Shown piece after piece: positions 6,180 to 64,000 of a DNA stretch of 64,000 nt. Origin of the DNA: Leucoraja erinacea (Eukaryota); NCBI RefSeq assembly GCF_028641065.1, contig NC_073387.1:15872001-15936000 (forward strand), written 5' to 3'. A program made the translations under genes and the position numbers. A model generated the notes under the pieces. The model saw nothing but the letters and a program-made list of their open reading frames with translations. It ran no database searches and was not told where the DNA came from. The first letter of the stretch is position 1. Each line of letters opens with the position of its first letter.

Positions 6180-6192
6180 CTGTGAAAAACAG

Positions 6193-6536: not shown

Positions 6537-6568
6537 CAATGAGATTCAGAGTGAGTAGTGGTGTGTAC

Positions 6569-42100: not shown

Positions 42101-44403
42101 TTAATTGGCTCATTCGCACCTATGATGTTCCAACTACAGAAGGTGAGACCTCCAACATTTATTCAACTATTATCTTGCATTGGCTATTATTACCAGACTG
42201 TATGATTCATGTGATGCAGCCAAGTACCTCGGAATCCCGAATCCAGAGTTGTCCTTCATAATTTCTACAGTAGTTTTACATCTCCTGACACTATTAAACA
42301 TAATTAAGGGAAAGAGAAAAACATAAAATAAAGTGTACATAAAAATTATTAAGTCTTACAACACATAATTGTGAATAAACAAAAAAAGTGAATGTAATTT
42401 ATCAAAAAAGCGATAAATTACAAAAAAGCCACCTAAGGTAGCTAGATTTGTTTTTAAATTGACCTCTGTCGATGAGATTATGCACTGGGCCTTATCCCCC
42501 TATTAGAATTTGACCCAACGTTAGTCGGTTCCCTCTAATTGTTACCCAAATTATCATATCAGATCAATTAATCGCTGAACAGTTTAAAATAGAATAAAAT
42601 AAAAGGGAGGGTAGAAGATTTGGATTAAAATAAAAGTAATTATGGGTTAAAGTACCTCGTCAATAATTACACTTTTCATTTACCTGTATGTTAGTTAATT
42701 CATAATTAGTATTTAGTATTTAAAATATATGTCTAACCTCCCCCATCCTTCCTGCTATATAGTTAGTCGTGTTAGTATAGAACATTATGCCTTTAATGTT
42801 GGATGAGTTTATTGCGCGTAATTGGTTAATTAGTTAGTTAGTTATATGTGTAAATAATAGGACATATAGTGTGGAACAGATGCCTCATATCATGGCCATT
42901 TCAAAAGGAGACGGTCTCATAGTTCTCCCTGCTGAAGGGTTTGGTGACGAGCTTGCGACCTTGAGCTTTCATATGTGCTTTCAGTTCAGGAGTTTAATTT
43001 GGCCTATGTTATTGAACAACACATTCTTGCCAGATAAGCCTGTCTGGTAACCGTCTGAAGCGTTCTAGTGTCTTAATTGAAACAGAAAAAACAAAGTTCC
43101 ACAGATAAAATGGCTATTAATCTGTTCCTCCTTGAATTTTGTTTAAAATCTCCTGGGCGTATTTGCAAGCAGAGTCCGGGTCCGTGAATGAGTGTTGCTT
43201 GCCCTTAAACGTAATTAGCATTTTCGCTGGATAGATCATGCCATAACGAACTTCAGAATGTCCATATAAAATACTGCTTGCCCTTTTAAACTCGCGTCTT
43301 TTTGCCAGAATTTCCCGAGGATAATCCCTGTAGAATCTTACGATATTATCAGCGAATGTAAGATTTTCTCCACAGGTTATCTTCTTTAATAGAGTTTCCA
43401 CAGTTGAAATATCTAGGAACTTTACAATAATTTGCCTTGGTGTAGCATTATCATGTTTTTGGAAGCGACCCACTCGATGAGCCAGATCTATCTTTGGTTT
43501 TTCTGGAAGTTTGAAAACATCTTTAAGTAGATTAGTAATAAAATCACGCATTTGAAGGCCGTGTTCAGCACCCTCTTTAACTCCTACTATTCTCAGATTT
43601 TGCCTCCTTGACCTGGCCTCTAAATCTTGACATTTCTCATTCAGTTTATTCGTTAGCTCCCAATTCGTATCGTGTTGTTTTTTCAGACCTGTTATTTCTT
43701 GGCTCATCTGTTCCATTTCACCCTCCATCTCTTCCATCAATTTTTCCGTGTCTGTTAATTGCTTCAACAGGGTGTCATGTTTATTGTTATAATCTCTCTG
43801 CATACTTTCCAATTCCTTCGCAGTCCTGGACTCCAAATCTTTAAACTGCTGGTTCAGGGCTACATAAAGCTCTTTTACTTCGCCGCAGCTATTTTCTTAG
43901 AAAGATTGCCCTCCATAGTGGAGAAGTTGTTCTGAATTGTAGAATTCATTTTGGCAAATTGCTTCTGAAGATCTTTAGTAATGTCTTTAAGAATATTAGC
44001 TCTTACCGTTTCTTCCCAGCTTTTCATTTCTTTCTCCTTTGTATCACTTCTCGCAGCCATATCGCTTGTAGGTTGTTGAGGTTCCAGCTCCTCTTCCAAA
44101 CTTTCAAAAGTGGGTTCAGGGGTGGTTTCAAGCTCATCCAGAGCTTTTTGGAGCTGGAAACTGATTGTAGTCTTCTTGGGTCCTCTCTGACCTCTTCTCT
44201 TTCTCATCCAGTTTTTACGATAAGATCGTTTAAAATCCCAAATCCACCAGTACCGTTTGATGGAGTCAGTACCCTCGACGTTCAGCAAACCTGATAAGAA
44301 TTTTTAACTCGATCCTGGCATGGGAGTCGACTTTAAACACGATTTGTCTGGAGGAGAGCTCAGTGCAGCTGCCTTCACTGCTTCATAGCAGCCACCGGAA
44401 GTC
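39182..44403 (-). mobile_element. L1 LINE, 5' intact and 3' truncated
   Basis: 5' gacttccggtgg. ORF1 44288-43117 (one stop; LEARSRRQNLRIVGV). ORF2 about 42180-39182 with APE and RT (LYADD), one frameshift near 40150. No CCHC, 3'UTR or poly-A. Confidence 0.93.
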
Positions 44404-46490: not shown

Positions 46491-46578
46491 ATGAGGCCGA
46501 AGTTTCTCTGCAGCGGTTTTCCAGATGGTTTGATGTTCGGTGTCTTTGTTTTCCTGCTTCGATCTGTTTCCACACAGA
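46491..46578 (+). CDS. Gene A leader/signal-peptide exon (MRPKFLCSGFPDGLMFGVFVFLLRSVSTQ)
   Basis: ATG, hydrophobic core FGVFVFLL and small-residue end. Phase-1 donor A|gtaagt at 46579; upstream acceptor tctcacag at 46478. An inverted homologue lies at 33943-34029. Confidence 0.75.
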
Positions 46579-47974
46579 GTAAGTGCTTTCACTTCACCGG
46601 TCACAATCACCTTGCTGTACTTTATCATTGTCCGTGTAAACCCGCACCCTTTTGTCAATCTCACTTTCCTCTCCACATCCCTGAATGTGCTGCTGCTCAC
46701 AAATCCATGCCATCCTTTTTGGAGCTCCATTCCTGAGCCCCTCGCATCAACTGCCTCCCCTCAGGGAGATATTCCCACCTGTGAGCTTGTTGCACAGGTC
46801 GCTGCCCAAGAATCACCCGCAATATCTTCACTTCACGCTCCCGCACAGTTCCGTCGTGCTGCCTCAAACAATAAGTGAGTTCTGTATTCTGAATAACGCA
46901 AGGAATCATGGGATTTGTCAAAGTTAGTAAGCTATAACAGTAAATAGATCTCAGCGTTATAGATACAATGAGTATACTTTTGGTCCGATTTTTTGTCTTT
47001 TGTCATGGTTGATTCAAAGTTCCAAGATATGAAGCTGGAAGATTTTATGTCATGGAAAGTCGAAGCTTTGAAGATTTTCTTAGCAGAGAGGGGGTTAAAA
47101 AATATGGGACGAAAAGCTGTACTTGTAGCTCTTGCTGTAGCTACAGCAATTTAAATCAGTCCAAAGAACTCCTTAAAGTCTATTGAAAGTTATAGAAATC
47201 AAACATTTAATTTCACTCCCCCCACCCTCAAGAAAAAAAAAATGCGTATCATTTATCTTGGCGATCTCGCTCACTCATGGAGGCATGAACCAATAAAAAC
47301 GAGAAAAATATCGCAGCTTTTTACAAAGGAAAAATAAATGCAACAAATTAATAGTTTTAAAACAGTATTTCCTTACTATAGTACTATCGAAACCACAGAG
47401 GAAATGAAGCCCTGTTTACACAAATCAGCTCAGCGCCCCTCGAGAGATCGGGGTGGGGGAGAGACCGGGGGTGGGGTGGATGGGTGGGGGGGAGACCGGG
47501 CGGGAGAACCCCTGGTTCTCTTTTGCATGTTTCAATAGGTTTGGGATAGTTTGATGTTATCTTTGTCCTTCACAATTCTGATATTTATTTACACATTGTG
47601 AAATTTAGTTGAGATAAAAAATAGGAAGCGAGTCAGCCCAGAGCTGAGAATAGACGAATCATTGTGGTTAAATGGCAAGACAGCTCTTCATGCAGCCTTG
47701 ACCATTTCTCTGAATTTTGCATCAGGTCCTGAATGTGATATGGGGAAATGCAGAATCCTTGCACCCTTCAAACCTCACATTTTTTAATATTCAAAAATAA
47801 ACTTTATTTCAGAATAATAAAGACCGGGCAAGGGGGAGCCCAGGCCGGGGGAGGGGGGGGAGACTGGACCGGCTCTCATCCGGAGAACTGCGTCTCGTTT
47901 CCAGTCAGGATCGGACCCGTGTCCCCGCAACCACAAACGCTGCCAAACTGCAAGCGCTGCATAACCGTCACTGG

Positions 47975-48106
47975 NNNNNNNNNNNNNNNNNNNNNNNNNN
48001 NNNNNNNNNNNNNNNNNNNNNNNNNNNNNNNNNNNNNNNNNNNNNNNNNNNNNNNNNNNNNNNNNNNNNNNNNNNNNNNNNNNNNNNNNNNNNNNNNNNN
48101 NNNNNN
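47975..48106. other. Assembly gap (132 N) in gene A intron
   Basis: Run of N ending 18 nt before the D1 exon. Confidence 1.
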
Positions 48107-48124
48107 TGCTCCTCTTTCCAACAG

Positions 48125-48463
48125 AAATCAGAAATCTGGTTTATTTCTTGGATAATGGAGGCAACATTACGTTAAAAGGACCGGACAATCCTGGGAGTGA
48201 CGTTGTTGTTTGGGAATGGAAACCACACTCAGGGCATGGAATCCAGACAGTGTTAACTGGCAGCAGAGCGGACAAGCATTGGACCATCCAGTGGGGCGAT
48301 GGCTGGAGAGAGAGTGACAAGAACCAGGAGGTGGATGTGGATGCCAGTACTTGTAATCTGACAATAAAAAACAACGCATTTAAATGGGCGGGATTCTTCA
48401 CTTTGTCTAAAACACAACCGAGGAAGCAAATCCTGAAACAATATGAAATATTTGGGATCAAAG
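48125..48463 (+). CDS. Gene A Ig domain 1 exon (V-like, lacks canonical B/F cysteines)
   Basis: ttccaacag acceptor, G|gtgagt donor, 339 nt, phase 1-1. Sequence KIRNLVYFLDNGGNITLKGPDNP..VWEWKPHSG..NLTIKNNAFKWAGFFTL..YEIFGIK; paralogous to D5 and to 33123-33458. Confidence 0.8.
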
Positions 48464-48585
48464 GTGAGTGGGCGAGACACGGATCAATAATGTGTTTCTC
48501 TGTATGTAAAGTCACATGTAAATCTATGTTTTGATGTTAATACTCCAGTCACTCTGGGCTGTGGGTAATAATTGGGCTACAGTTA

Positions 48586-49269
48586 AGGGCCTGTCCCCCT
48601 TACGTAACATTGTCACGCAAATTACGCGACCTCGTGGTCGTGTTGAGGCGCACGGGCATCCTATGGCCACGTGGGGCCGGTCCCACTGAGAGGAGGGGTA
48701 TGTAGTTGTGCGTGACATCGCGCGGGGCCCCGAAATTTCTGTAGCGAGCAAAATCTTTGCGCACCAACGGCCTGTCGCATAACTGACGGCCAAAGTGGGA
48801 CCGGCCCAAGACGCTGGCGCGACGCAATTTCTCACCTGCAACAGCAGCAGAAGCAGGCAAACGATCGCCGAGCTCGGCCTGGGGCTCACGGACGTTGCAG
48901 TCCGGTTCCGCCCCCACTTCTACTCCCAGAGCGGGGCCAAGAAAATTGAAGGTAGACACAAAATGCAGGAGTAACTCAGCGGGACCGGCAGCATCTCTGG
49001 AGAGGAGCAATGGGTGACGTTTCGGGTCAAGAGCCTTCTTTTCAGATTGAAGAAGAGCCTCGACACGAAACGTCACCCATTCCTTCTCTCCAGAGTTGCT
49101 GCCATTCCCACAGAGTTACTTTGTGTCCATCTTCAAATGACGTCACGCGCTCCAGACGGTAGTGTGTACGCATTAAATCGTGCGCGACCCTCGTGGGACC
49201 GTCACGGCTCAACGTGACCATGAGGTCGCGTAATTTGCGTGCCAAGGACACGTAAGTGGGACAGGCCCT
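48586..49269. mobile_element. PIF/Harbinger-type MITE
   Basis: TIR agggcctgtccc(c/a)cttacgt ... acgtaagtgggacaggccct; TTA target duplication on both sides. Confidence 0.85.
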
Positions 49270-49649
49270 TTAGTTTCTTCACTTTTCTTTGATCACAGAC
49301 AATCGCAGTAGCAGGTAACTCAACATGTCCACCAGGGGACTTTTATACGCTCCACAAATTAATTCCCCAATACAACAGTAGGAACCAAAAGACTAACTCA
49401 TAAGATTAACTTATAAATATCTGATACAATAATTATAATATAATTCGTAGCCTTATTATGACAACAATAGAAATAATTATAATATCATTAGTAGCCATAT
49501 AATGACTTCAATAGAAATAATATATTGTATAGTATTATTATTATTATAATAAACCGTACAAAAATAAATGCAATACAATACAACTTAGATTACAATCTTC
49601 CCTTGCTACAAAAAGAAATGTCCTTATTTAAACAGTGACCAACAAGCCA

Positions 49650-51260
49650 CAGCACTGGCAATAGACACAACAAGTGTCTGGAGGAACTCAACAGGACAGG
49701 CAGCATCTCTGGAGAGAAGGAATGGGTGACGTTTCGGGTTGAGATCCTTCTTCTTCAGACTGGTTAGGAATAAGGGAAACGAGAGATATAGACAGTGATG
49801 TGGAGAGATAAAGAACAATGAATGAAAGATATACACAAAAGTGACGATGATAAAAGAAACAGGCTGTTTGTAGCGTGAAAATGAGAAGCTAGTGTGAATA
49901 GGGTGGGGGAGGGATGGAGAGCGAGGGAATGCAGGGGCTACCTGAAGTGAGAGAAATCAATATTCATACCACAGGGCTGTAAGCTGCCCCAGTGAAATAT
50001 GAGATGCTGTTCCTCCAATTTGCATTTAGCCTCACTCTGACAATGAAGGAGAACGAGGACAGAAAGGTCTGTGTAGGAATGGGTAGGTCAATTGAAGTGT
50101 CCAGCAACTGGGAGATCATGTTGGTTCACGTGGGCTGAACGATGGTGTTCCGTGAAACAATCGACCAGTCTGCCTTTGGTCTCGCCGATGTAAAAGAGTC
50201 CAAATCTTGAACAACGAATACAGTAGATTAGGTTGGAGGAGGTGCAAGAAAACCTCTGCCTCACCTGAAATAGCTTTCGGGGTCCCTGGACAGAGCCAAG
50301 GGAGGAGGTATAGTGACAGGTGTTGCATCTTCGGCGGTTGCAGGGGAAGGTATCTGGGGAGTGGGTGGTTTGGGTGGGAAGGAATGAGTTAACCAGGGAG
50401 TTGCGGAGGGAACGGTCTCTGCGGAAGGTGGGAAGGGTTGGAGATGGGGAAATGTGGCTAGTGGTGGGATCCCGTTGGTGGTGGCAAAATTTAGGAGGAT
50501 TATATGTTGTGTACAACTGCTGATGGGACTAGGGGGACTCTGTCTCTGTTGTGACTAGGGTGGAGAGGACGCAAGGGCAGAGCTGTGGAGTACCGAGGAG
50601 ACAAGAGTGAGGGCCTCATGAATGATGGGAGAGGGGAACCCCGTTGCCTAAAGAATGAGGACATCTCGTATGTTGTGGTATGGAACACCTCATCTAGAGT
50701 GCAGATGCGGCGTAAAAGGAAGAATTGAAAGTAGGGGATAGAGTCTTTGCAGGAAGCAGGGTGGGAAAAAGTGTAGTTGAGATAGTTGTGGGAGTCAGTG
50801 GGTTTGTAATTGATGTCAGTCAATAGTGTATTTCTTGTGATGGAGACTGTGATATCAAGAAAGGGAAGGGAGGTGTCAGAGATGGTCCAAGAAAATGTGA
50901 AAGCAGGATGAAAATTGGTGGTGAAGTGGATGTTCCATGAGTTCTGCATGGGTGCATGAGTTAGCAACGATGCAGCATCAATGTAATGAAGATAGAGTTT
51001 GGGGATATGGCCAGTGTACGCCTGAAACAGAGATTGTTCAACATACCGAACCAATAGGGAGTCATAGCTGGGGCCAATGCGGGTGCCCATTGCTACGCCT
51101 GGAACATGGAGGAAGTGAAATGAGTCAAAGGAGAAGTTTTTGAGGGTGTGGACCAGCACCGCTAACACCATCACTAATTTCATCACTTCTGGCTGTCTGC
51201 CTTCCACAGCCTCCAACCATATAGTTTCCCAGCCCCGCAAAGCCAGTTTTTACCTTCTCT
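49650..51260 (-). mobile_element. Penelope-like element (RT plus GIY-YIG), degenerate; further fragments at about 53020-53690
   Basis: GVAMGTRIGPSY, LPFLDI, YKPTDSHNYL, CxxxxCxxC and NLIYCIRC..YIGETK..HFN motifs. Confidence 0.85.
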
Positions 51261-51974
51261 CATAGGCCTGGCCAAGCTGGCCACCTGCGAGTCATGGCGC
51301 CAGGTGGATGAGGGCTCTGCCCGAGCCAGCTGCCTGCCGCTTTTCCGGGGTTACGTCCGTGCCCGGGTGGTTTTGGAGAGGGACTATGAACTCTGGGGGA
51401 ATTCCGGGACCGTTGGGCACCGCGGGGGGTTGAATGCATCCTTGACAAGGACTGTAAGATAGTTGTATAATAGTTTATTGTTTGGCTTGTATTATGGTGG
51501 TGGGTTGTGTTGTGTTTTATTGTCTTGTAAATATTACTTTAATATTTGAATAAATGTATTGAACAGCAACAACGTAACTGTGTAGACCGATACTGGTTCA
51601 GATGAGTTTATTGTCATAAACACCAGGATGAAAATACATTTTTGTTCACATGAAGCTCATTGAGTAAAAGTTAATGATGGATAAAATTATAAACACAATA
51701 AATGCAACACAGCAGAACAGTGCAGAGTTTTCAGAGCTGTCTGAATGAACGCAAAATAAAACTAAGGTACAATAACTGCAAGAACATGTGACAGCACCAC
51801 CAGGAAGTGCGAGTGAAGGTGATGTCAAGAGTCTGAAATCACTAGGAAATCACTGGGAAAGAAGTTGTTCTTCAGTCTTTATGTCTACGTTATCAGTTGA
51901 GGTGAGATTGAGCCCAGTCATTGGACTGTCCACACCACTACTCACTCTGAATCTCATTGATCTGTTTTTCACAG

Positions 51975-52244
51975 TTGAGGCAAGTCCACAGCGCCCTCTG
52001 CTGGGCAGTGACGTCACACTCAGCTGCACCATCTCCAGACTGTCAGATACAGTCAGTCTTCACTGGAGACCAATGGACTCATCCCAGCAGAACAGGAGCA
52101 ACACTGATCAGATCCGCCTGAATAACACGGTCTATCTGATGGTTCGACATGTTACAGTGGAGGATGGGAAGCTGTATGTGTGTGAAGTGCAGGAAAATGG
52201 AAAAATCGTTCATACAAGTAAAGCCAATTTTAATGTTACTGTGG
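51975..52244 (+). CDS. Gene A Ig domain 2 exon (C2-type)
   Basis: gtttttcacag acceptor, G|gtgagt donor, 270 nt. VEASPQRPLLGSDVTLSC..LHW..EDGKLYVC gives the C-W-C Ig signature. Confidence 0.9.
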
Positions 52245-53897
52245 GTGAGTGTCAATACCTCATATTAGATATTGAACATACACTTGTACCATTGGTGCTT
52301 ATTATAATATCATGTGTGCACCCCGTAAAGAATTGTAGTTTGTGTCCAAAATCTCATTTGTACAAAATGCTTCAGTGTTCAGGGAGAAGCTTCCAGAAAG
52401 TCTCCCTGTGGAGCAGCTGCCTGTTCATCTCTGTTTGACAGATACACAATACTGAAAGAATGAATTCTAATATGTTTAGTAAGAGTAACTCAGTGGGGCA
52501 TTACTGGGGAACATTAATAAGTGACGTTTTGGGTCAGAACTTTTCTTCAGATTGAAATGATTCCAGCTGCTCCAGACTCGGGCTTCAGATCAGCATTCAG
52601 CTAGGAGCAGAACCCAGGAAGAGGGAAGGGCTGGGAATCAATGGGTGTGAATGGGAGAGGGATGGTGGGAATAATGGGAATGAAGTGAAGGTCGGGATTG
52701 GATGCAAAGAGAGGTAGGAGGCAGCTGATGTGTGACAGAGAGTGGGGTAGGGCTGATGTTTGCAACATGCTGGCTCTGTATGAGGGTGAGCGAGAGGGTG
52801 AGGACACGTTCAGCATTCCCACGGGGGAGTCACTAAGATGCCAGACCAGCTCATAATTATGTAAAACCCACCCCATGAAGATGTCAGTCCTCCTGTGATT
52901 CCAGGTTAATGTGTTCACACCATCTTGTTCTGTAACCTGGTCACCCTGTGCTCTTCATCTCTCCCCCAAGCTCCCTGTAGAACTGTCTCTGCTGTGTAGA
53001 CATTAACACGGACACGAGTGTTGCAAACTCTGCCGGGGTCTGACGTGGAAGGGTCACCATCCAATATATTGTAGACATGAAGAACTGCAGATACTGATTT
53101 ACAAAAAAGAGACAAAGTGCTGAATAATGGTGGATCTGGCAATATCTCAGGATGCTGCCTGGCCCACGTTTTCGGTCGAGACCTTTCTTCAGACTGATTG
53201 TAAAAGGGGGAGAAAGCTGGAAGAGGGTTGGGGGTGTGACAAGGCCTGCAAGTGATAGGGGGACATAGGTGATGGGGGAGGGGGGGTTGTTGATTAACAA
53301 ATGGTCGGACAAAGGCCAGAGATAAAATTGTGAACCAGTGTGATATGATAACGATAGAAGACATGTGGGGGGAGGGGGATGCTTACATGTTAGTAACCAA
53401 ACACTGGATAATTCAATGTTTGTATCATTGGGTTGCAAGCTATTCCAGCAGAATATGAGTTGCTGTTGCTCCAGTTCAGAACTCCGCGACTGGACAAGAG
53501 GAGGAAATGATTTATGTGGGGCAGGGGTAGGCAGAACCAATGGGTCTGCCAGGGCTGCCCTGTTTGTGGTGTTTCAGAAGGAGATAGATAGGGGCTGGTG
53601 GACGATTAGGTTGGAGGCTGTGGATGGGCGATCGCCAGAGATGATGAGATCAGTGACATTCTGGGAGATGGTGGCCTGGTGCCTGTATTGTAGTGGGCAT
53701 CTGTTTTATTTTTAGAAAAAAACCTGAAGTGTTTTGGTGTGGAATTCATGCAAGAAGTCACATTTTGAAACTTATCAGATGAACAAAACACAAAGAATTT
53801 TAATAAAAATCTGGTTGGGAATTTTTACCTGATTACCCCTGTGCCTCAGTAACTGTGATGCTGAAAGGAGTTCTATTCTTTTGTCTCTCTGCTATAG

Positions 53898-54242
53898 ACA
53901 TATACAGCAAACGTCACACACTTTACCGCACCAGCACAGATCACAGTGAAGTCCAGCTGGTTTGCTATTTTCTTCCTGGTTCCGACATTTCTTCTGACGT
54001 GTGTACCTGGACATATAGTCGCCTAAATGACCAGGACAAAGTAATAGCATCAGCAACATTCTCTCAACCCATCAATGTCGCCAATACCGCTTTTAAGAAT
54101 CGACTGATGACCTCAGTGAAACACTTCAAAGGCGAGGATTTTAGTGTGCGGATTGTCCCAGTTTTGTTTGAAGATGCCGGAGTTTACAAATGTTCAGCAG
54201 GAACATATCCATTTCTCACCATTGATCTAATCACAGTGAAAG
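53898..54242 (+). CDS. Gene A Ig domain 3 exon (V-set)
   Basis: gctatag acceptor, G|gtagga donor, 345 nt. QLVC..TW..NRL..DFSVRIVPVLFEDAGVYKC is a V-set motif. Confidence 0.9.
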
Positions 54243-54320
54243 GTAGGAGACAGAATGCTGCCAGTGTTTTCACTGATGAACTAATTGTTTAAAATATAAA
54301 CAACCTGCTTGTTTCCACAG

Positions 54321-54581
54321 TCACAGCTGAACCGTCCGATGCAGTGACTGAGGGAGACAACGTTACCCTGACCTGCTCTGTGTCTCACGTCACTGAGTCA
54401 ATGAGACTGGTTTGGATCAATGGCGATGACAAACGTGTTGGAGAAAAGACACTGACCGTGGAAGAGAAATCACTGAGTCTGGTTATTCAGAAAGTTGAGA
54501 GGGGCAGAGGGAATTGGAGATGTGGTTTGTTTCATCAAGACCTGCCCCGGCTTTTAGTCCCGTACTATCAGGAGACCAGTG
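54321..54581 (+). CDS. Gene A Ig domain 4 exon (C2-type with WxC F strand)
   Basis: ttccacag acceptor after a 78-nt intron, G|gtaagt donor, 261 nt. VTAEPSDAVTEGDNVTLTC..LVW..GNWRC. Confidence 0.9.
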
Positions 54582-55139
54582 GTAAGTGACTCAGGATTTG
54601 CTCTTCATACTTAGAATCAGGATCACATTTTGATGTCACTTATTGCACTATTTGCCAGTATTCACTCCTCCTTTACAGCCTATGTGGGATGCTTTGGTGT
54701 GGTGTAGTGCCTGGGAATATGGACCGTGGGATAACTCCGTGCCCCTGGGTTAATATTGAAACTTCACCTTTCTATGTGTCACTGATGGGAAAGTGGGAAA
54801 GTGACAGAGCTGGGACAAGCATTGGGTCCTGTCAGCAAAACAGAGCCTTTCCATTGGACCCTGAACCAATTCCACTGCCGGAATCACTGCCCACAGTCCA
54901 TCATGCCCATACTGACCGATGCTGAACACAGAGAGACCATCTCACTGATCCTCCTCACTCGGAGCACAGCTGGACCCTGGAGTGTTCAGGATATCTGGAT
55001 GGAGAACGCTGTTTACATAAGCAGTCCTGCCACCTGTGGTACTATAAACTGTGCAATCATAGAATCATGCAGCATTGGAATGGGCTGCTTACCCATTTCA
55101 TCCATGTTGACCAGTTATACATGTCAATAATGTCCCGTC

Positions 55140-55780
55140 AGAGACCTCAACTCCATGGCAAATAGATTTTGCTTATCTAATCTCTTCTCAAGTAGCATCC
55201 TGTCAATCTCCTCTATACCTTCTCCAGTGCTACCACATCCTTCCTGTCATTTGGTGACCAGACTGCATACAGTACTCCAGCTGAGGTCTGACCAAAATTT
55301 ACACATCTGCCGCATAACTTCCCTACTTCTGTGATCTATGTCCTGACTGATGAACACACTATCCCGTATGCCTTTCCAACCACATTATCTATTTGTGTGT
55401 CCACGTTCAAGGATCAATGGACGTACTCCAATGTCCCTCTGTTTCTCAATAATTTGTCAGACCTTGTAATTCATGGTGTATGTCCTAGCCCCATTTGTGC
55501 CCCTAGGACACATCACCTCACAAATTCTGGATTAAGATCCATCTTTCATTTCCCAGCACATTTCACCAACACATTGACATCTCTCTGCAGAATAAGACCA
55601 CTGTCCACACTATCAACAACTTCACTAATCTTGCCTGCCAAATCCACTGCTATCCACTGCAAGACATTTGTGTACATTAGATTCAACAAGGTCCCAGGAC
55701 CAATCCTTGTGGAACACCATTAGTCACCGTTAGTTACAGGCATCCGGGTGTAAAAATAACTCTCTGTCATCGCCTTCTGT
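55140..55780 (-). mobile_element. Old CR1-like remnant in the D4-D5 intron
   Basis: Reverse strand carries degenerate gtcagacctcagctggagtactgtatgcag and ggtgttccacaagga RT segments. Confidence 0.55.
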
Positions 55781-56756
55781 CTCCTGTTGCCATCGATGAT
55801 TGGACATGGCTGCTGACTGTTTGCAAATAAACCTGCCCTCCTCTGCCCCATCTCCATTGGTCATTGTTGGGTCAACCAGCCCTCCCTCCACTTTTCTCAT
55901 AGAAGACTTGATTAGACTGGGAGACTGTGAAATGTCCATACAATCTCCCCACACCATCATGGATCTCAGCTCCTCTCAAACTCTTCCCCCAAACCATATG
56001 TTCAATAATCTGAATTCACACATTCACAAGGGCTGGTGAACAGTGCCAGAGACCTGGGTTCAATCCTGACCAAGGGTGCTGTCTGTATGGTGTTTGTACG
56101 TTCTCCCTGTGATCGTATGGCTTTTCTCCAGATCCTCCGGTTTCCTCCCACATTGCAAAGATTTGCAGGATTGTAGGTTAAGCGGTCTCTGTAAATTATC
56201 TCTTGTGTGTAGGATGGAACTATTGTGTGGGGTGATCAGTGGCCATCATGCACCCGGTGGGACAAAGGACATGTTTCCAAACTGCATCTTGAAACTAACT
56301 AAACAAAACTAAACCAAACATCATTACTTGTGGTAACTGTGTGCCATTTCTGCTCTCCTCTGATGCCAATCTCATGTGCTTATCAAATTATAAAACGTCT
56401 AGCTTAACTGTGATGTATTGTTACATTAGTGATGCAATGGTAAGCTGTTCTATGGATGTACTTCACTGCTTGTTGTAAAATATAGTTGTATTTAAAACTG
56501 CTGGGCAAATCACACTTGAATCACATTGGCATTGCGGACAATTGACCAAACAGATGGGACAAATATGGAAGAGTACACTGGTCGACATCGCTGGGCTGGG
56601 TTAGAGGGTCTGTTTCACTGCTATAAAATTATATCATTCTATAAACTATAACTAACAACCTTTTTAAAGAAAACAATTTCACAGTATTCAGTACGACATA
56701 GATCAGACTGAGAAGTTATCGTCCGATATTAAAACACTATTTTGCTTTTCTGGCAG

Positions 56757-57095
56757 GGACTACTATTTACCTTTTCCACCAGGAAGGCAACTATGTGTTG
56801 AAAGGACCAGACAGTCCTGGAAATGGCCCCATTGACTTGGAATGGAGGCCACACTCAGGGCAACAAACCACAAAGCAATTGGCTACTTTTCACAGAGAAG
56901 ATCAGCAGTGGGCCGTACAATGGAGTGATGAGTACAATCAAATACCAGGCATTTCCCAGAGTATGCATATGGACTGGGGTACCCTTAATCTGAGGATCAG
57001 GAAACCCATCTTTGAACTTGCAGGGCTCTTCACCTGGAATCAGGCACAGCCCAGTGGGAAAATCCTGAGACAGTGGGAACTATTTGTGATCAAAG
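56757..57095 (+). CDS. Gene A Ig domain 5 exon (cysteine-free V-like; paralogue of D1)
   Basis: tttctggcag acceptor, G|gtatgt donor, 339 nt. LKGPDSP..LEWRPHSG..LNLRIRKPIFELAGLFTW..WELFVIK. Confidence 0.8.
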
Positions 57096-58348
57096 GTATG
57101 TCGGAGGAGGAACAGAAAGGGTAGACAAATGTGTTTTTCTGTAACGTTTTCCACAAATTTGTGACAGATTGTTGGAATTAGGTCAGTTATTTGATGAGTT
57201 TTTTTTATACAAACAATGCTGCAGAGTTAATGAATTGATGAATATCCCCACAATTTGGAAACGGCCAAGACTGACAGATGTGGAATCATCAATTTTTTAA
57301 TGACATGTATAGCCATTTTACTGCTCTGTTACCCCCACACCTCCACCCCACCATTCATTCTAATTCAATAACAGAAATGGCTGGAAAATTTCACAGCACG
57401 TCAGGCAGCATTTGCAGAAAGAGAAACAGTCAAGATTTCTGGGAACGACTTGAGGAAGACGGCAGCCCAGGCAGCATTGAAATGTGGTGAAACCAGGGAA
57501 CTTCTCCTGATAGAGAGAAGACCTGTGGCAGGTGGGATAAGATCAGTTCACTGTAGCTGAGTAATTTGTTGATGATGTGGTTCTGGCCGACTGTGACATA
57601 CTCTCTACACAGAGAGGAAACGGAAAACAATGATGCCTGACGGTAATAATCCTTATGTAGATGGAAGTTCCATATTGACAATAGAAGGTAACAACTTGCC
57701 CAGACCAAAGATGAGGTGTGGCTCTTGGAGCATGTTGTCAAAAATGCTTATATTTTAGCTACATCAATATCTAAGATCTGTGTTCCAACATATTGGATTC
57801 TGGAAACTGTTAAAATATTAACATTAACTTTCAGTTTTCCCTTCTTCATTTTCCGTCACTGGGGAGGGTTTAATATGAATGTCAGCTCTGGTAATATGAT
57901 GGCCATGTTTAGGACAGATATTCCCATAAACTGGCCCTGACACTGGGAAAGTGAAGTCCTGGCCACAGAGAGGGCCCAACCTCTGTAGCAGCTTCCTCAA
58001 GGTCAGCAGCAGTGACCTTGCTTCACCAGGCCATTGTTAGCCAAGTCATCGACAGCACAGAGACCATGGGAGGGTTGCGAGAGGTGGCGGGAGGCAGAGC
58101 TGGTGCTGGGAACCTACCTGTGGAAGCTGCTCAATGTCTTTGGATGATGTTGTTCGGGAGCAGTGGGTAGATGTGGGAGACGAGGGGGACGAGGGGGACA
58201 GGTGGTCACTACCAGGAAGTGTGGATGACATCACTGAGCACGGATGCTCAACATTCGGCCGACTGTCTGTTTGCAGGAAAGAGACAATTCTGCCCGCAGT
58301 CGTTCAGAAAGCTGGACTGAACCACACGTCATGTGTCTGTTTCCACAG

Positions 58349-58621
58349 TTGAGGCAGACTCACCGAGGCCAGTAATGGGCAGTGACATCACCCTCAGCTG
58401 TACCATCTCCAGACTCCCAGATACCGTCAGTCTTTACTGGAAACCAAGAGGCTCATCTCAGCAGAACAGGAGAAACAACACTGATCAGATCCATCTGAAT
58501 AACACCGTCTATCTGATGATCCAACACGTTGGAGCAGGAAATCCCAATCTGTACACATGGGAAGTGCTGGAAAATGGCTCCATTGTTCTCACTGGAGACA
58601 CCAATGTTGAAGTGGATCAGG
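58349..58621 (+). CDS. Gene A Ig domain 6 exon (C2; paralogue of D2; F-strand Cys replaced by Trp)
   Basis: ttccacag acceptor, G|gtgagt donor, 273 nt. VEADSPRPVMGSDITLSCTISRLPDTVSLYW..NNTVYLMIQHV..LYTW. Confidence 0.88.
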
Positions 58622-59421
58622 GTGAGTCCAAAGCTGCCTTGCAGCAGGTATTAAATAGTTCTTGATATCAAACTGTTCCACATATTGTACAGTGAGCTCT
58701 GACTTCACCGTGGGCTTTCACTGCAGGATATTGGCATTGCCTTTAACCTGGGACACGGTGTAAATATAAAATGGTGGCACTAAAATTGATGGAGCTACAC
58801 AGGAGAACCAAGGGATTAATTTCAATTCACCTGCATGAATCAAAGGGGATAACATCAATCAATGGAGAGAAGCAAGTTGTCTTCTGTCCAGAGTAGATGG
58901 GAATATTAACTTATTCAAGATAATGTACAGCTGCACCAAAATTCAGTTGTTGGCTGAACCATTTCCTTGGGTTGGGTGTTGTTCGTCACTCACTCCAGTG
59001 ATCTTAGTGTCTGACATTCAGTGGCACTCTCATCTTCCAAATAATGTTCCTTCATGTCCCTCTCACTGTATGACTCACCTTGTGTAACAACCTGATGCCC
59101 AGTTCAATGTGTGATAAATATTTCACTGTAATCGATTTCTGAGACTGGGTAACAGATTGTTTATTATCTCCAGTCCACCGGCATCACTTTGCTGGGTGTG
59201 TGTCTGGGGAAGATGGACTTTGGTGCACAGCCCGGCGTTTGAACAATGGGCACCTGGACCGGCAGTCAGTGTATTGCAGCTCCCAGCCGACTTTCCTGTC
59301 TCAGTGCGGCCCTCCCAGCTGACATTCCAGAGCTGGGGGTTTGTCCCTGTGGAAATTCAGATTATCTGTATCTCACTATCTGTGGAAATCTAATTCTTTG
59401 TTCCCTGTCCCTCTCTTGCAG

Positions 59422-59760
59422 ATTTATATAACAAGATGTACACAGTTTATCGTTCAGTCACAGATCACAGTGAACTCGACCTGATTTGTGAAGCTTCTCT
59501 TGAGCTCAATGAAACCAAATGGACTTGGAGATCACAACATGTCCAAAATCAAGAGAAGGAAATATATTTTTCTCACAGGTCTGAGCCGATCCATGTCGAC
59601 ATGAGTTACTTTGGGAATCGACTGAAAACCACAGAGGGAAATGTGAATGGCACGAATTTCCGTGTGAGGATTGTCCCCGTGCAGTTTGCAGATGCTGGAG
59701 TTTACACATGCTACATAGGATCAAATAAATATGTCACCATTGATCTAATCACAGTTACAG
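59422..59760 (+). CDS. Gene A Ig domain 7 exon (V-set; paralogue of D3)
   Basis: ctcttgcag acceptor, G|gtagga donor, 339 nt. TDHSELDLIC..WTW..NRL..FRVRIVPVQFADAGVYTC..TIDLITVT. Confidence 0.9.
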
Positions 59761-60844
59761 GTAGGAGACTGAATATTGGAATATGAATGGTAAAGTCATT
59801 GGGCTAAAGTACTCACTTTCATGCAGACTTTGATTTCAGCACATGTTTCTCCAAATATTTTACTCTGAAAAAAGATTTAAATCCCTGTCCCACGGTACAA
59901 GTTCATTCCAAGAGCTCTCCCTAGTTTGCCTTCATTCAAACTCGGAGATATACGGTAATGGCCACTCGTCAGTACTCGGGGCTCTCATGGACATTTTTCA
60001 TCATGTTGTCAAATCTTCATGAGTCTTCCCGTGCTTACCTGCCATTAGCGAGTCTTCCCGAGTACCTGCCGTCAGCACTAAGAGACGAGCTCCGACGTAC
60101 CCGCTATGTTCATTCTCCGTGCTTACCACGAGTTTGATTTTTTAAAACTCGGGAGAGCTCTTGGAATGAACTCACACTGTGGGACAGGGCTATAATTTCA
60201 ATAGAACTGCTACTCAAATATAGTTGTATTTTACTCATTAAAAAATTGCCCTGATAAAACACATGTTAATTCACAATTTAAAAAAAATCCCTTTGCCACT
60301 CCTCCACCTGTGCATTCCCTGAGTTTGAAGCACCATCACAATGTGTTGGAGGTTGGGTCATTAATGGGAAGTAGACTCGGGGTGAGGGTCGCTGCCGACA
60401 GTCGTGGTGGTGGGAAGTGGGTGGTGTCTTGGACTGGTCGTCTGTCTTTTATTTGATTGGTGGGAGTGGGTTGTGTCGACTGATTGTTGGATGTGTACTG
60501 TCCGATCATGTGATCAATGGGTGGAGAGGCTGTTGTGTGATGGGTGTGTGGGGTTCTTGATTGGGTGAAAGTGATGAGGTCTGGAGGAGGGTGGAGGTTG
60601 CACTCCACCCTCCTTGGGGGGGGGGGGGGGGAGGGGGAGCAGAGGGGCTCAGGTGAGAAGCGCTAATGAAATAAATTAAAGGGAACCCGCCTGCATTTGG
60701 TGCTGATCATTTGCTTATTTCCTGCTCAATTCCTTTAAATTGTGAAGAAACATTTTTGAAGCTTGCCCAAGCAGACTACCAATCCCAATATAAATCCAAG
60801 AAGTCTGTAACTTGGGTCCACTGTGTGTTATATACCCCTAAGAT

Positions 60845-63800
60845 ACTGGAAGAGAGAAGGTGGGTGACGGTGAGAAAGGGAGGGAAACATGGAATGCAAA
60901 GGTCCCTGGGTGTTGTACCTCTTGTGAACAGGTTCACCCGCTTAGAAGCTGTCGGGACAGAAGACGTTATCACATAGAGCGGCTGGCTGAGTGGCAGTTT
61001 AAATTCCATTTGGAATAATTTGGAGGACCAAGAAACCAAGAACCAATAACCAAGAAGCAAAAAGGGCTGTTGAGCCAAAACCAAAGAGGCCGACGTCAGG
61101 CAACGCCATTGTAGTTGGAGACTCCATTGTGAGAGGTACGGACAGGGGTTTCTGCGGGAACAGACGGGATTCGAGGATGGTGTGCTGCCTTCCTGGTGCC
61201 AGGATCCAGGATGTCACGGACGGAGTGCAGAAAATCCTCAAGGGCGAAGGTGAACAGCCGGAAGTGGTAGTGCACGTCGGCACAAACGATGTCAGAAAGA
61301 AGTGGATGAATATTCTGCAGCGTGACTTTAGAGAGCTCGGAAAAATGCTGAAAAGCAGGACCTGCCAGATGGTGTTATCTCTGGTTTGCTTCGAGTTCCT
61401 CGTGCTGGCGAGAGCAGGAACTGGGAGATACGGGGCCTGAAAGTGTGGCTGAGAAACTGGTGCAGGGGACAGGGATTTAGATTCTTAGAACACTGGGATC
61501 TGTTTTGGAGTAAAGGGGAACTGTACAAAAGGGACGGATTGCATCTTAACAGGTGGGGGACCAGCATCCCGGCAGGCAGGTTTGCCACTGCTACATGGGT
61601 GGTTTTAAATTGAATATGGGGGGTGGGGTGTCAAATGGGATAGTCAAGGACGGAGTTAAAGGGAAAGAGAGTAAAGGGAGAGTTAATGCCCCTAGAATTA
61701 ACGGGAAAGGAAGCTCACAAAGGGATAGGAGAGTATGGCCAAGTGTAATAGGGATCGATGTGAATGGTGAGATGCGTAAGGAATTAAAAGTATTGTATAT
61801 GAATGCGCAAAGTATAAGAAGTAAAGTAGATGAGCTTGAGGCTCAGTTAGAGGTTGGCAGACATGACATTGTGGGGATTACTGAGATGTGGCTGCAGGAG
61901 GATCGGGCCTGGGAACTTAATATTCAGGGTTATACATCCTATAGAATGGACAGGCAGGTGGGCAGAGGAGGAGGGGTAGCTCTGCTGGTGAGGGCTGGAA
62001 TTCAGTCCCTTGCAAGGAAGACATAGGGACTGACGAGGTAGAGTCACTGTGGATTGAGTTGAGGAATTGTAAAGGCAAGAAGACACTAATTGGTGTTATC
62101 TACAGACCCCCAAATAGTAGCCCGGATGTAGGGTGTAAGGAGTTAAAACTGGCATGTAACAAAGGTAATGCCACTATGGTGATGAGGGATTTCAATATGC
62201 AGGTAGACTGGGAAAATCAGGTTGGTTCAGGACCCCAAGAAAGAGAGTTTGTAGAATGCCTCTGAGATGGATTCTTAGAGCAGCTTGTAATGGAGCCGAC
62301 CAGAGAAAAGGCAATGCTGGATTTAATGTTGTCCAATGAACCAGATATGATAAGAGAATTTGAGGTAAAGGAACCGCTTGGAGGTAGTGATCATAATATG
62401 ATTAGTTTTAATCTGCAATTTGAGAAGGAGAAGGTTAAATCGGCAGTGTCAGTAATGCAGTTGAACAAAGGGGTCTATGAAGGCATGAGAGGGAAGCTGG
62501 CCAAGGTAGACTGGAAAGGGATCCAAGCAGGAATGACGGTGGAACAGCAATGGCAGGAATTTCCGGGCATACTCCGGAAGAATCAGGATCATTTCATTCC
62601 ACAAAGGAAGAAAGATTCTTAGGGGAGTAGGAGGCAATCGTGGCTGACAAGAGAAGTTAGGAATAGAATAAAACTAAAAGAAAAGATGTATAACACAGCA
62701 AAGAGTAGCCGGAAGCCAGAGGATTGGGAAACTTTCATAGGACAACAGAAGTAAACTAAACGGGTAATACGGCTGAAAAGATGACGTACGAGGAGAAGCT
62801 GGCCAAGAATATAAAGATGACAGTAAAAGCTTCTTTAGATATGTTAAGGGAAAAAGAGTAGCAAAGTCAAAGTGGGTCCCTTGAAGGCAGACATGGGTGA
62901 AATTATTATGGGCAACAAGGAAATGGCAGAAGAGTTGAATAGATACTTCGGATCTGTCTTCACTAACGAAGACACAAACAATCTCCCTATTGTGCTGGAG
63001 GACAGAGCATCTAAGGGGGTAGATGAACTGAAATAAATTTTAATTAGGCGAGAAATATTATTGGGTAGGCTAATGGGATTGAAGGATGATAAATCCCCTG
63101 GTGGTCTGATGGTCTGCATCCCAGGGTCCTCAGGGAGGTGGCTCTAGAAATAGTGGACGCATTGGTGATCATTTTCCAATGTTCAATAAATTCAAGATCA
63201 GTTCCTATGGATTGGAGGATAGCTAATGTTATCCCACTTTTCAAGAAAAGAGCAAGAGAGAAAACGGGGAATTACAGACCAGTTAGCCTGCCTTCGGTGG
63301 TGGGAAAGTCAATTATTAAAGAGGTAATAATGGGGTATTTGGATAGCAGTAAAAGGATTAGTCCAAGTCAACATGGATTTATGAAAGGGAAATCATGCTT
63401 GACTAATCTTTTGCAATTTTTTGAGGACAAGTAAGATGGATGAAGGGGTGCCAGTGGATGTAGCGTATGTAGACTTTCAGAAAGCCTTTGATAAGGTCCC
63501 GCACGGGAGACTGGTGACCAACATTAGAGCACATGGTATTGGATGTAGGGTGTTGACATGGATAGAAAATTGGTTGGCAGACCGGAAGCAAAGAGTAGGA
63601 GTGAACGGGTCCTTTTCAGAATGGCAGGCAGTGGCGCGTGGAGTGCCGCAAGGCTCGGTGATGGGGCCGCAACTGTTTACCAAATATATTAATGATTTGG
63701 AAGAGTGAATTAGGAGCAACACCAGCAAGTTTGTGGATGACACAAAGCTGGGTGGCAGTGTGAACTGTGCAGAGGATGTTAGGAGGTTGCAGGGTGACCT

Positions 63801-64000
63801 GGACAGGTTGAGTGAGTGGGCAGATGTGTGGCAGATGCAGTATAATATAGATAAATGTGAGGTTATCCACTTTGGTGGCAAAAACAAGGGGGCAGATTAT
63901 TATCTCAATGGGGTTAGGTTAGGTAAGGGGGAGGTGCAGCGAGACCTGGGCGTCCTTGTACACCGGTCACTGAAAGTGGGCTGACAGGTACAGCAGGCAG
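60845..64000 (+). mobile_element. CR1 LINE with SGNH-esterase ORF1 and disrupted ORF2, running off the window
   Basis: VGDSIVRG, VHVGTND, DGLHLN (esterase); NAQSIRSK, YRPP, SDH, YRPVSL, DFQKAFDKV, DDTKLGG; multiple stops. Confidence 0.93.

What the first reader, a model, noticed from the sequence alone, without database searches (positions are those of the whole stretch)
46491..59760. Ig receptor with an internally duplicated CD4/LAG-3-like cassette: leader + (V*-C2-V-C2)-(V*-C2-V-...)
Seen: eight exons, all GT-AG and phase 1, splice to 751 codons without a stop. D5, D6 and D7 are clear paralogues of D1, D2 and D3, and no leader or TM exon is evident between D4 and D5. D4 has the F-strand WxC (GNWRC), and V-to-C2 junctions run on with no linker (LITVK-VTAEP, FGIK-VEASP). 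Known: V-C2-V-C2 with WxC typifies CD4, LAG-3 and teleost G6f-like proteins, which have four or two domains. Inference: a seven- or eight-domain member of this wider family, possibly an undescribed cartilaginous-fish immune or thrombocyte receptor. The pattern differs from CD4 (D1 lacks the disulfide, D2 has YxC), so it is probably not the CD4 orthologue.
Basis: partly seen in the sequence, partly recalled or inferred. Interest (0 to 1): 0.88.

Follow-up and report, generated by a model that had tools for sequence, protein, structure and literature searches.

The report
Eight-domain CD4/LAG-3-like skate receptor gene
This is a real little-skate gene for a long surface-type protein made of two copies of a four-part, CD4/LAG-3-shaped immunoglobulin module. 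It is already in RefSeq as an unnamed protein, and it is one more member of a large shark-and-ray immune-receptor family that this scan has met on neighbouring DNA.

Summary
Observation confirmed. The eight exons (46491-59760, + strand) all have AG/GT borders and phase 1, and give 751 codons with no stop. The N gap (47975-48106) lies in intron 1, 18 nt before the D1 acceptor, and breaks no exon. D5-D7 are paralogues of D1-D3 (40, 64 and 43 % identity).

The model is identical to RefSeq LOC129701496 of Leucoraja erinacea (851 aa, "uncharacterized protein"). That model adds a D8 beyond the window and has no membrane span.

About 60 relatives exist in sharks and rays. Most are ~990 aa, with eight domains, a membrane span and two ITIMs; some carry Arg or Lys in the span. 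Weaker relatives occur in sturgeon, paddlefish, bichir and eels. None is named.

All D5-D8 cassettes form one clade, so the duplication predates the shark-ray split.

An AlphaFold model shows one continuous strand across each V-to-C2 junction. Its best match among 48,161 solved chains is CD4 D3-D4 (Z 15.3, 3.0 A, 170/177 residues). LAG-3 and CD4 are also among the best profile matches.

WxC is present in D4 only, so this is CD4/LAG-3-like, not CD4 or LAG-3.

RNA reads confirm the D3>D4 and D6>D7 junctions but mostly carry paralogue-type letters. The D4>D5 junction was not seen, at ~1x depth.

The scan found this family before on neighbouring DNA (s1-141729, s1-877330).

The parts
46491..46578 (+). 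Exon 1: start codon and signal peptide (29 codons plus 1 base), donor GTAAGT
   Evidence: 100 % match to residues 1-29 of RefSeq P0083. Leader homologues in relatives.
47975..48106 (.). Assembly gap (132 N) inside intron 1, ending 18 nt before the D1 acceptor; it interrupts no exon
   Evidence: Not filled.
48125..48463 (+). D1: V-like domain without the B-F disulfide (WEWKPHSG motif), phase 1/1
   Evidence: No Pfam hit. The D1+D5 profile finds 43 cluster representatives. In the model, residues 31-141 superpose on V domains at 2.3-2.5 A over ~102 residues.
51975..52244 (+). D2: C2-type domain with the normal LSC...YVC disulfide (YxC, not WxC)
   Evidence: C160 and C212 are invariant in the family alignment.
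53898..54242 (+). D3: V-set domain
   Evidence: Pfam V-set E 2e-7. The D3>D4 junction is seen in RNA reads.
54321..54581 (+). D4: C2-type domain with F-strand WxC (GNWRC)
   Evidence: W413 and C415 are (nearly) invariant. WxC aligns with the WxC of LAG-3 D2 and D4. Model residues 237-431 superpose on CD4 D3-D4 (Z 15.3).
56757..57095 (+). D5: paralogue of D1 and first domain of cassette 2
   Evidence: 73 % identical to D5 of the Mobula eight-domain protein P0004.
58349..58621 (+). D6: paralogue of D2, with the F-strand Cys replaced by Trp (YTWEV), a family-wide trait of cassette 2
   Evidence: W618 is nearly invariant.
59422..59760 (+). D7: V-set paralogue of D3. The donor GTAGGA leads into an intron that holds a LINE. 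D8 lies beyond the window.
   Evidence: The D6>D7 junction is seen in RNA reads. Residues 757-851 of P0083 do not map in the window.

Best explanation
Window 46491-59760 holds the first eight exons (leader plus Ig domains D1-D7) of little-skate gene LOC129701496. The gene encodes an eight-Ig-domain type I protein, leader-(V*-C2-V-C2)-(V*-C2-V-C2).

It belongs to a large, unnamed multigene family of elasmobranchs, with weaker relatives in non-teleost ray-finned fishes and eels. The four-domain cassette consists of two rigid V-C2 rods of the CD4/LAG-3 type. The cassette was duplicated once, before sharks and rays split. The gene lies in a cluster of paralogues.

Most eight-domain relatives end in an uncharged membrane span and a tail with a YxN motif and two canonical ITIMs about 39 residues apart. 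Some instead have Arg or Lys in the span and a short tail.

Inferred mechanism for the family: paired inhibitory and activating leukocyte receptors. They would bind a still unknown ligand with the variable membrane-distal V domains (D1 and D3) and signal through ITIM-recruited SHP phosphatases or through an adaptor chain.

For this gene, the anchor and tail lie outside the window, and the RefSeq model stops after D8. So it may be an inhibitory receptor whose last exons were missed, or a soluble or decaying member.

Shown here: exon structure, paralogy, identity with the RefSeq model, family range, age of the duplication, and the predicted CD4-like fold. Inferred: cell type, ligand, signalling, and a common origin with CD4/LAG-3.
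For: - Exon chain, phases and open frame.
- Identical RefSeq protein P0083, including the junction ..PYYQETSG-TTIYLFHQ...
- No leader, membrane-span or tail exon between D4 and D5.
- The D1+D5 profile finds only this family (43 representatives, 25 at E<=1e-10).
- 62 long relatives in Mobula, Hemitrygon, Hypanus, Pristis, Amblyraja, Rhinoraja, Narcine, Carcharodon, Cetorhinus, Rhincodon, Hemiscyllium, Chiloscyllium, Stegostoma, Ginglymostoma, Heterodontus, Heptranchias and Pristiophorus.
- Window D5-D7 match D5-D7 of the Mobula proteins (73/80-83/62 %) better than they match D1-D3.
- All 31 cassette-2 rows form one clade (SH-aLRT 97), sister to cassette 1 plus the four-domain members (93).
- AlphaFold2 model (pLDDT 74.9, pTM 0.67) has single strands across each V-to-C2 junction (131-146, 336-350, 537-550, 740-754).
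- The best of 48,161 chains is rat CD4 D3-D4 (Z 15.3, rmsd 3.0 A, 170/177). Human CD4 D1-D4 gives Z 15.8 over 310 residues. LAG-3 D3-D4 gives Z 12.7, 165/173, 21 % identity.
- Profile against PDB sequences: LAG-3 E 1e-10 with two stretches that span V-end plus C2 and align WxC; CD4 E 8e-8.
- Tails of relatives have two ITIMs (IHYGSI, VIYAQI) or a charged span.
- D1 and D3 are the most variable domains (50 and 56 % mean pairwise identity); D5 and D6 are the most conserved (73 and 77 %).
- RNA reads cover exons but not introns, and show the D3>D4 and D6>D7 junctions.
Against: - The D4>D5 junction was not reported in the RNA reads. Depth there was about 1x, and the listing threshold is 3 reads.
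- Most exon reads are only 95-99 % alike and carry paralogue-type changes: 54360 A>C and 54429 A>G give the residues of LOC129701495. Expression of this very gene is therefore not shown.
- RefSeq P0083 has no membrane span or tail.
- D8 of P0083 has lost two conserved Trp (W781C, and W818H of WxC).
- A LINE sits in the D7-D8 intron.
- The CD4/LAG-3 likeness is partly generic. CEA scores as well as LAG-3 as a whole sequence. Many V domains reach Z 12-13. D1-D2 has no CD4-specific top match. WxC is missing from D2 and D6.
- The structure is a prediction.
Confidence: 0.8

Rival explanations
1. The gene is a decaying or non-functional member (a pseudogene in the making), or only a soluble form. 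The exons in the window are still open, but the gene has lost its membrane anchor and tail and is hardly expressed.
For: - RefSeq P0083 stops 14 residues after D8 without a hydrophobic span.
- 6 of its 17 departures from conserved family columns lie in D8, among them both conserved Trp.
- A LINE lies in intron D7-D8.
- Only a handful of RNA reads are 99 % or more alike; the rest carry paralogue-type letters.
- A truncated paralogue remnant lies head-to-head upstream, so gene decay does occur in this cluster.
Against: - All eight exons are open, with canonical splice sites.
- The overall departure from conserved columns (17 of 359) is mid-range for the family.
- A scan note places dual-ITIM tail exons 13.8 kb beyond the window (s1-877349). 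These may belong to this gene, but this was not tested.
- Four RNA runs of unknown tissue at 5-25 % sampling cannot show silence.
Confidence: 0.2
2. The resemblance to CD4/LAG-3 is only the general likeness of V-C2 tandem Ig receptors. The family would be an independent Ig-superfamily lineage (nearer to CEACAM, nectin, JAML or CD200R-type receptors) with no special common origin with CD4/LAG-3.
For: - CEA is the best whole-sequence profile hit (8e-12), and NCAM, pIgR, MXRA8 and JAML follow closely.
- phmmer with a single member gives only E 0.01-0.2 for LAG-3 and CD4.
- The best two-domain matches for D1-D2 are CD200RLa, CD166 and Lutheran, not CD4.
- WxC is absent from D2 and D6.
- No CD4- or LAG-3-named protein appeared in the large sequence searches.
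Against: - CD4 D3-D4 is the single best match in an unbiased search, 1.4 Z above the next chain, and it superposes both domains at 3.0 A.
- Whole CD4 aligns over 310 residues of D1-D4.
- The best single profile stretch is with LAG-3 (22.9 bits, against 17.0 for CEA). It crosses the domain junction and aligns WxC and the following G strand.
- Continuous junction strands are rare among Ig proteins (PMC10768021).
Confidence: 0.3
3. There are two separate four-domain genes (D1-D4 and D5-D8) that were wrongly joined.
For: The D4>D5 junction was not seen in the RNA reads. Four-domain family members exist.
Against: - No leader, membrane-span or tail exon lies in the 2175-nt intron.
- The phases are compatible.
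- The same direct junction is present in about 30 RefSeq models of many species and in a nurse-shark database entry (P0093).
- No cassette-2 sequence carries a leader of its own. The one model that starts inside D5 (P0105) starts in mid-domain.
- Cassette 2 is one old clade.
Confidence: 0.04

Closest known systems
CD4 (T-cell co-receptor)
   Same: - V-C2-V-C2 order.
- Rigid V-C2 rods with one strand running from V strand G into C2 strand A (predicted).
- WxC in the F strand of D4.
- The best structural match of the model is CD4 D3-D4 (Z 15.3, 3.0 A, 170/177). All four CD4 domains align (Z 15.8, 310 residues).
- One V-type domain lacks the disulfide (D3 in CD4, D1/D5 here).
   Different: - Eight domains instead of four.
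- D2 and D6 lack WxC.
- Sequence identity is only 13-16 %.
- Relatives carry dual ITIMs or a charged span, not the Cx(C/H) LCK motif.
- It is a multigene family in a cluster, not a single gene.
- Shark CD4 is a different, already identified gene (PMC10768021).
LAG-3 (CD223)
   Same: - Same four-domain plan.
- It gives the best single-stretch profile match (profile D3-end plus D4 against LAG-3 D1-end plus D2, and against D3-end plus D4), with WxC and the G strand aligned.
- It has the highest identity of the structural matches (20-21 %; Z 12.7-13.1).
- Inhibitory tail logic: LAG-3 has an ITIM-like (F/Y)xxL(D/E) motif, and relatives of this gene have canonical ITIMs.
   Different: - No long loop 1 in D1.
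- WxC occurs in only one C2 domain per cassette.
- Two canonical ITIMs plus YxN, instead of one ITIM-like motif.
- Eight domains.
- Shark LAG-3 has been identified separately (PMC10768021).
Teleost G6f-like (G6fL) and mammalian G6F
   Same: [quoted passage not shown] Relatives of this gene also have a membrane-proximal YxN (YSN/YAN).
   Different: G6fL has an ITAM and is a thrombocyte collagen receptor; relatives here have ITIMs. No sequence comparison with G6f or G6fL could be run, because no tool returned such a sequence.
Paired inhibitory/activating Ig receptors (LILR, KIR, PIR, SIRP, PECAM-1 type)
   Same: This is what the family works like: a multigene cluster with ITIM-tailed members and members with Arg or Lys in the span and short tails, the most variable domains at the membrane-distal end, and rapid duplication and decay in the cluster.
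   Different: The domain types and their order differ. No detectable specific sequence kinship. Ligands are unknown.

Membership tests
CD4/LAG-3 family (features as listed in PMC10768021) | V-C2-V-C2 ectodomain | tested here: met
   Pfam V-set for D3 and D7; Ig_3/ig for D2, D4 and D6. D1 and D5 are V-like in the model. The pattern is present twice.
CD4/LAG-3 family (features as listed in PMC10768021) | Continuous beta-strand across the D1-D2 and D3-D4 junctions (rod-like V+C2 sets) | tested here: met
   In the predicted model only: strands 131-146, 336-350, 537-550 and 740-754 cross the four junctions. D3-D4 superposes on CD4 D3-D4 at 3.0 A over 170 residues.
CD4/LAG-3 family (features as listed in PMC10768021) | WxC motif in strand F of both D2 and D4 | tested here: not met
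   D4 has NWRC. D2 has YVC (YxC). D6 has YTW (no Cys). D8 of this gene has NHRC, while relatives have WxC. So WxC occurs only in the second C2 domain of each cassette.
CD4/LAG-3 family (features as listed in PMC10768021) | Tail motif: Cx(C/H) for CD4, or (F/Y)xxL(D/E) for LAG-3 | not testable with these tools
   The tail lies outside the window and the RefSeq model has none. Relatives have IHYGSI and VIYAQI ITIMs and no Cx(C/H).
CD4/LAG-3 family (features as listed in PMC10768021) | Genomic place beside CD4/LAG-3 (GNB3/USP5/COPS7A region) | not testable with these tools
CD4/LAG-3 family (features as listed in PMC10768021) | Specific sequence similarity to CD4 or LAG-3 | tested here: inconclusive
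   Profile against PDB: LAG-3 1e-10 and CD4 8e-8, but CEA 8e-12. A single sequence gives only E 0.01-0.2.
Unnamed elasmobranch V*-C2-V-C2 receptor family (RefSeq 'uncharacterized protein', e.g. Mobula XP_072120630.1, Amblyraja LOC116978408) | Disulfide-less D1/D5-type V domain (WEW(K/R)PHSGQ, AGLFT) | tested here: met
   The profile of window D1+D5 finds family members at E down to 1e-154. Window exons are 50-93 % identical to them.
Unnamed elasmobranch V*-C2-V-C2 receptor family (RefSeq 'uncharacterized protein', e.g. Mobula XP_072120630.1, Amblyraja LOC116978408) | Eight domains with a distinct cassette-2 lineage and Cys>Trp in D6 | tested here: met
   P0083_c2 lies within the cassette-2 clade (97). 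YTWEV is in window D6 and W618 is nearly invariant.
Unnamed elasmobranch V*-C2-V-C2 receptor family (RefSeq 'uncharacterized protein', e.g. Mobula XP_072120630.1, Amblyraja LOC116978408) | Membrane span plus dual-ITIM tail, or charged span plus short tail | tested here: inconclusive
   Present in most relatives but absent from the RefSeq model of this gene. The DNA beyond 64000 could not be read.
G6F / teleost G6f-like | Four Ig domains, tail with YxN and (in fish) an ITAM; thrombocyte expression | not tested
   No G6f sequence was returned by any tool. Relatives have YxN but ITIMs, not an ITAM. G6fL features are from PMC3528668.
Skate MDIR (modular domain immune-type receptors) | CD300/TREM/pIgR-like V domains | not tested
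   Known only from the description in PMC3031540. No MDIR-named protein appeared among the hits, and CD300/TREM are not among the fold matches.

The most novel reading that the evidence does not exclude
The family is a third, undescribed branch of the CD4/LAG-3 superfamily. It predates the shark-ray split, survives in cartilaginous fishes and early-branching ray-finned fishes, and comes in inhibitory and activating versions and in a doubled, eight-domain form. If so, it would be an outgroup for working out how the MHC class II co-receptors arose. For example, was the ancestral cassette an ITIM-bearing innate receptor with WxC in only one C2 domain?
Probability: 0.3. Interest if true: 0.75.

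Novelty: new variant of a known kind. Interest (0 to 1): 0.5.

Why it matters
CD4 and LAG-3 are the only well-described receptors built from two rigid V-C2 rods, and their origin is unresolved. This is a large family with the same predicted architecture but ITIM or charged-span signalling, present from sharks to sturgeons and eels.

If the kinship is real, it offers comparison material for that question. It also adds a paired-receptor system to the thin list known from cartilaginous fishes.

This locus adds three things:
- a second eight-domain member in the same skate cluster;
- evidence that the cassette duplication is old;
- a case where the anchor and tail may have been lost.

It does not by itself open a new question beyond what the neighbouring loci already showed.

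Tried and rejected
- CD4 or LAG-3 orthologue: rejected. Shark CD4 and LAG-3 are known genes (PMC10768021), WxC is missing from D2 and D6, and relatives have ITIM tails.
- Two separate genes: rejected.
- ESM Atlas look-up of cassette 1: only generic Ig clusters.
- Foldseek with the whole 851-residue model: dominated by long multi-Ig proteins (CNTN2, DSCAM), so it did not discriminate. CD4 and LAG-3 did have the highest target-normalised TM (0.39 and 0.33).
- Searches for named bony-fish relatives: only unnamed sturgeon, paddlefish and bichir proteins, plus weak CD22-like hits. The word filter capped the candidates, so a blank means little.
- Literature searches for the family, for the nurse-shark 'obscurin-like' entry V9NJF3, and for MDIR: no paper on this family was found. 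Hits for 'obscurin' were the word 'obscuring'.
- The D4>D5 junction stayed below its listing threshold, which is not evidence against the junction.
- The joined (spliced) window model was never sent to a search or a fold. Window exons were searched one by one by reference. The joined form was used only inside a script, to count codons and stops. For whole-protein work, the identical database protein P0083 returned by a search was used instead.

Full report
**1. The observation**

I re-derived the eight exons from the window. They are 46491-46578 (leader), 48125-48463 (D1), 51975-52244 (D2), 53898-54242 (D3), 54321-54581 (D4), 56757-57095 (D5), 58349-58621 (D6) and 59422-59760 (D7). Each acceptor ends in AG after a pyrimidine tract and each donor begins with GT. 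Every Ig exon starts and ends in phase 1. The sum is 2254 nt, which is 751 codons with no stop.

**2. The gap**

The N run 47975-48106 lies inside intron 1. It ends 18 nt before the AG of the D1 acceptor, so no exon or frame crosses it. The leader/D1 split codon gives Lys (STQ-K-IRN). The same leader type is joined in the same way to the same D1 type in Amblyraja proteins P0006 and P0007. This argues that no exon is hidden in the gap. The gap's true length and the branch site are unknown, and nothing was filled in.

**3. Paralogy and domain types**

- D1/D5 are 40 % identical, D2/D6 64 % and D3/D7 43 %.
- Pfam calls D3 and D7 V-set, and D2, D4 and D6 Ig_3/ig.
- D1 and D5 have no Pfam hit. They lack the B and F cysteines but keep the C-strand Trp (WEWKP / LEWRP).
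- D2 has the normal LSC...YVC pair.
- D4 has NWRC, the WxC motif.
- D6 has YTWEV, with Trp in place of the F-strand Cys.

**4. It is an annotated gene**

A profile of D1+D5, searched against 1.84 billion cluster representatives, found only 43 proteins. A follow-up search with the best full-length hit returned P0083, which is RefSeq 'uncharacterized protein LOC129701496 [Leucoraja erinacea]', 851 aa.

- tblastn shows its residues 1-756 lie on the eight window exons at 100 % within exons. The direct D4>D5 junction (..PYYQETSG-TTIYLFHQ..) is included.
- Residues 757-851 (D8) are not in the window.
- P0083 stops 14 residues after D8 and has no hydrophobic span.

The spliced window model itself was not sent to any search. 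Window exons were searched singly by reference, and P0083 stood in for the whole protein.

**5. One gene or two**

- The 2175-nt D4-D5 intron and the stretch 59761-64000 hold no leader-, span- or tail-like exon, by relaxed tblastn with the leaders and tails of seven relatives and by a hydrophobicity scan.
- The only leader homologues in the window are at 46491 (+) and about 34003 (-).
- Window D5, D6 and D7 are 73, 80-83 and 62 % identical to D5, D6 and D7 of the Mobula eight-domain proteins. That is more than to any D1-D3.
- In a tree of 31 first cassettes, 31 second cassettes and 15 four-domain members, all second cassettes form one clade (SH-aLRT 97). That clade is sister to first cassettes plus four-domain members (93).

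The duplication therefore happened once, before sharks and rays diverged, and the eight-domain form has been kept since.

**6. RNA**

Four raw RNA runs of the species label were laid on 53850-59800.

- Reads cover D4, D5, D6 and D7. They leave the introns empty except for a SINE-like repeat at 56040-56112.
- The junctions 54242>54321 (6 reads, two runs) and 58621>59422 (4 reads) are as predicted.
- The D4>D5 junction was not listed. Depth at its two sides was about 1x and the listing threshold is three reads, so this says nothing either way.
- Nearly all exon reads are 95-99 % alike and share fixed differences. 54360 A>C turns GDN into GDT, and 54429 A>G turns INGDD into INGDG. Both are the residues of the paralogue LOC129701495 (P0090).
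- The reads therefore come mostly from a close paralogue or a divergent allele. Expression of this very gene is not shown.

**7. The family**

Relatives are all 'uncharacterized' or 'hypothetical'. One nurse-shark entry (P0093) is called 'obscurin-like'.

- They occur in rays and skates, and in lamniform, orectolobiform, carcharhiniform, heterodontiform, hexanchiform and pristiophoriform sharks.
- Weaker D1-type matches occur in sturgeons, paddlefish, bichir, bonefish and eels.
- Most eight-domain members (~990 aa) have an uncharged span, a YSN/YAN motif and two canonical ITIMs (IHYGSI and VIYAQI) about 39 residues apart.
- A few have Arg or Lys in the span and short tails.
- D1 and D3 are the most variable domains (50 and 56 % mean pairwise identity). 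D5 and D6 are the most conserved (73 and 77 %).
- LOC numbers 129701489 to 129701496 and the window itself show a gene cluster.

**8. Likeness to CD4/LAG-3**

The family features were taken from PMC10768021.

Sequence:
- A profile of 15 four-domain members against PDB sequences gives CEA 8e-12 (a sum of many weak repeats), LAG-3 about 1e-10 and CD4 8e-8.
- The best single stretch is with LAG-3 (22.9 bits). It runs from the E-F-G strands of the V domain through the whole following C2 domain, and it aligns WxC and the G strand.
- A single sequence gives only E 0.01-0.2.

Structure:
- AlphaFold2 was run on P0083 with 33 family rows (pLDDT 74.9, pTM 0.67).
- It predicts one long strand across each of the four V-to-C2 junctions.

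Fold search:
- With the whole model, Foldseek is dominated by long multi-Ig proteins.
- VIA-align puts CD4 first, both among Foldseek's top 1000 and in the unbiased scan of 48,161 chains.
- Rat CD4 D3-D4: Z 15.3-15.4, rmsd 2.9-3.0 A, 170 of 177 residues, on model residues 237-431.
- Human CD4 D1-D4: Z 15.8 over 310 residues.
- LAG-3 D3-D4: Z 12.7, 4.2 A, 165 of 173 residues, 21 % identity.
- Below them lies a plateau of single V domains and Fabs at Z 12-13.
- D1-D2 has no CD4-specific top match.

Membership: WxC is found in only one C2 domain per cassette. The tail motifs of relatives are ITIMs. Linkage to the CD4/LAG-3 region could not be tested. I therefore call it CD4/LAG-3-like in architecture. 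It is not CD4 or LAG-3, and a common origin remains unproven.

**9. State of this gene**

It departs from 17 of 359 conserved family columns, which is mid-range. Six of those departures lie in D8, including both conserved Trp. Together with the missing anchor in RefSeq, the LINE in intron D7-D8 and the thin specific RNA support, this leaves room (about 0.2) for a decaying or soluble member. A scan note places dual-ITIM exons 13.8 kb beyond the window.

**10. Verdict**

The gene model already exists in RefSeq. The family is large, widespread and unnamed, and I found no paper on it. This scan already met the family at two neighbouring loci (s1-141729, s1-877330). This locus is one more member: of moderate interest in itself, and of higher interest if the family proves to be a true third branch of the CD4/LAG-3 superfamily.

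Noticed in passing
window 33118-34038 (-), 30005-30265 (-), 5920-6180 (-): Remnants of a paralogue lie head-to-head with the gene. There is a leader exon (90 % to the LOC129701495 leader), a D1 exon whose match is split over frames, and two copies of a D2-like exon. No D3 or D4 was found. It is probably a truncated or decaying family member.
   Followed up: partly
window 4637-8013 and 28723-32095: A direct duplication of 3.4 kb at 98.3 % identity carries the D2-like exon. It is either a recent segmental duplication or an assembly duplicate.
   Followed up: partly
window 56040-56112: A SINE-like repeat lies in the D4-D5 intron. Many RNA reads from elsewhere in the genome pile up on it (depth 4-13, with loose ends on both sides). 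It is not an exon of this gene.
   Followed up: partly
window 61129-64000 (+); also 39110-44288 (-), 18876-21900 (+), 23328-27120 (+): These are LINE-type retrotransposons (endonuclease plus reverse transcriptase by Pfam). The first sits in the D7-D8 intron, which explains why D8 lies outside the window even though the matching D3-D4 intron is only 78 nt.
   Followed up: partly
window 58349-58621 (D6) and family alignment A2: The F-strand Cys of D6 is replaced by Trp (YTWEV) in nearly all eight-domain relatives from sharks to rays. The second cassette's first C2 domain therefore lacks the canonical disulfide as a conserved trait, not as damage.
   Followed up: yes
window 1466-4092 (-): Two adjoining long ORFs (370 and 414 aa) have no Pfam family above threshold. 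They may be a transposon-derived or unannotated gene.
   Followed up: partly
window 9964-10063: A second assembly gap (100 N), outside the finding.
   Followed up: no
P0026 (sturgeon relative), tail: The sturgeon four-domain relative ends in two YxN motifs (YDNV...YENC) instead of ITIMs. This recalls the Grb2-type YxN of G6F/G6f-like. It is a lead for the G6f question that could not be tested here.
   Followed up: no
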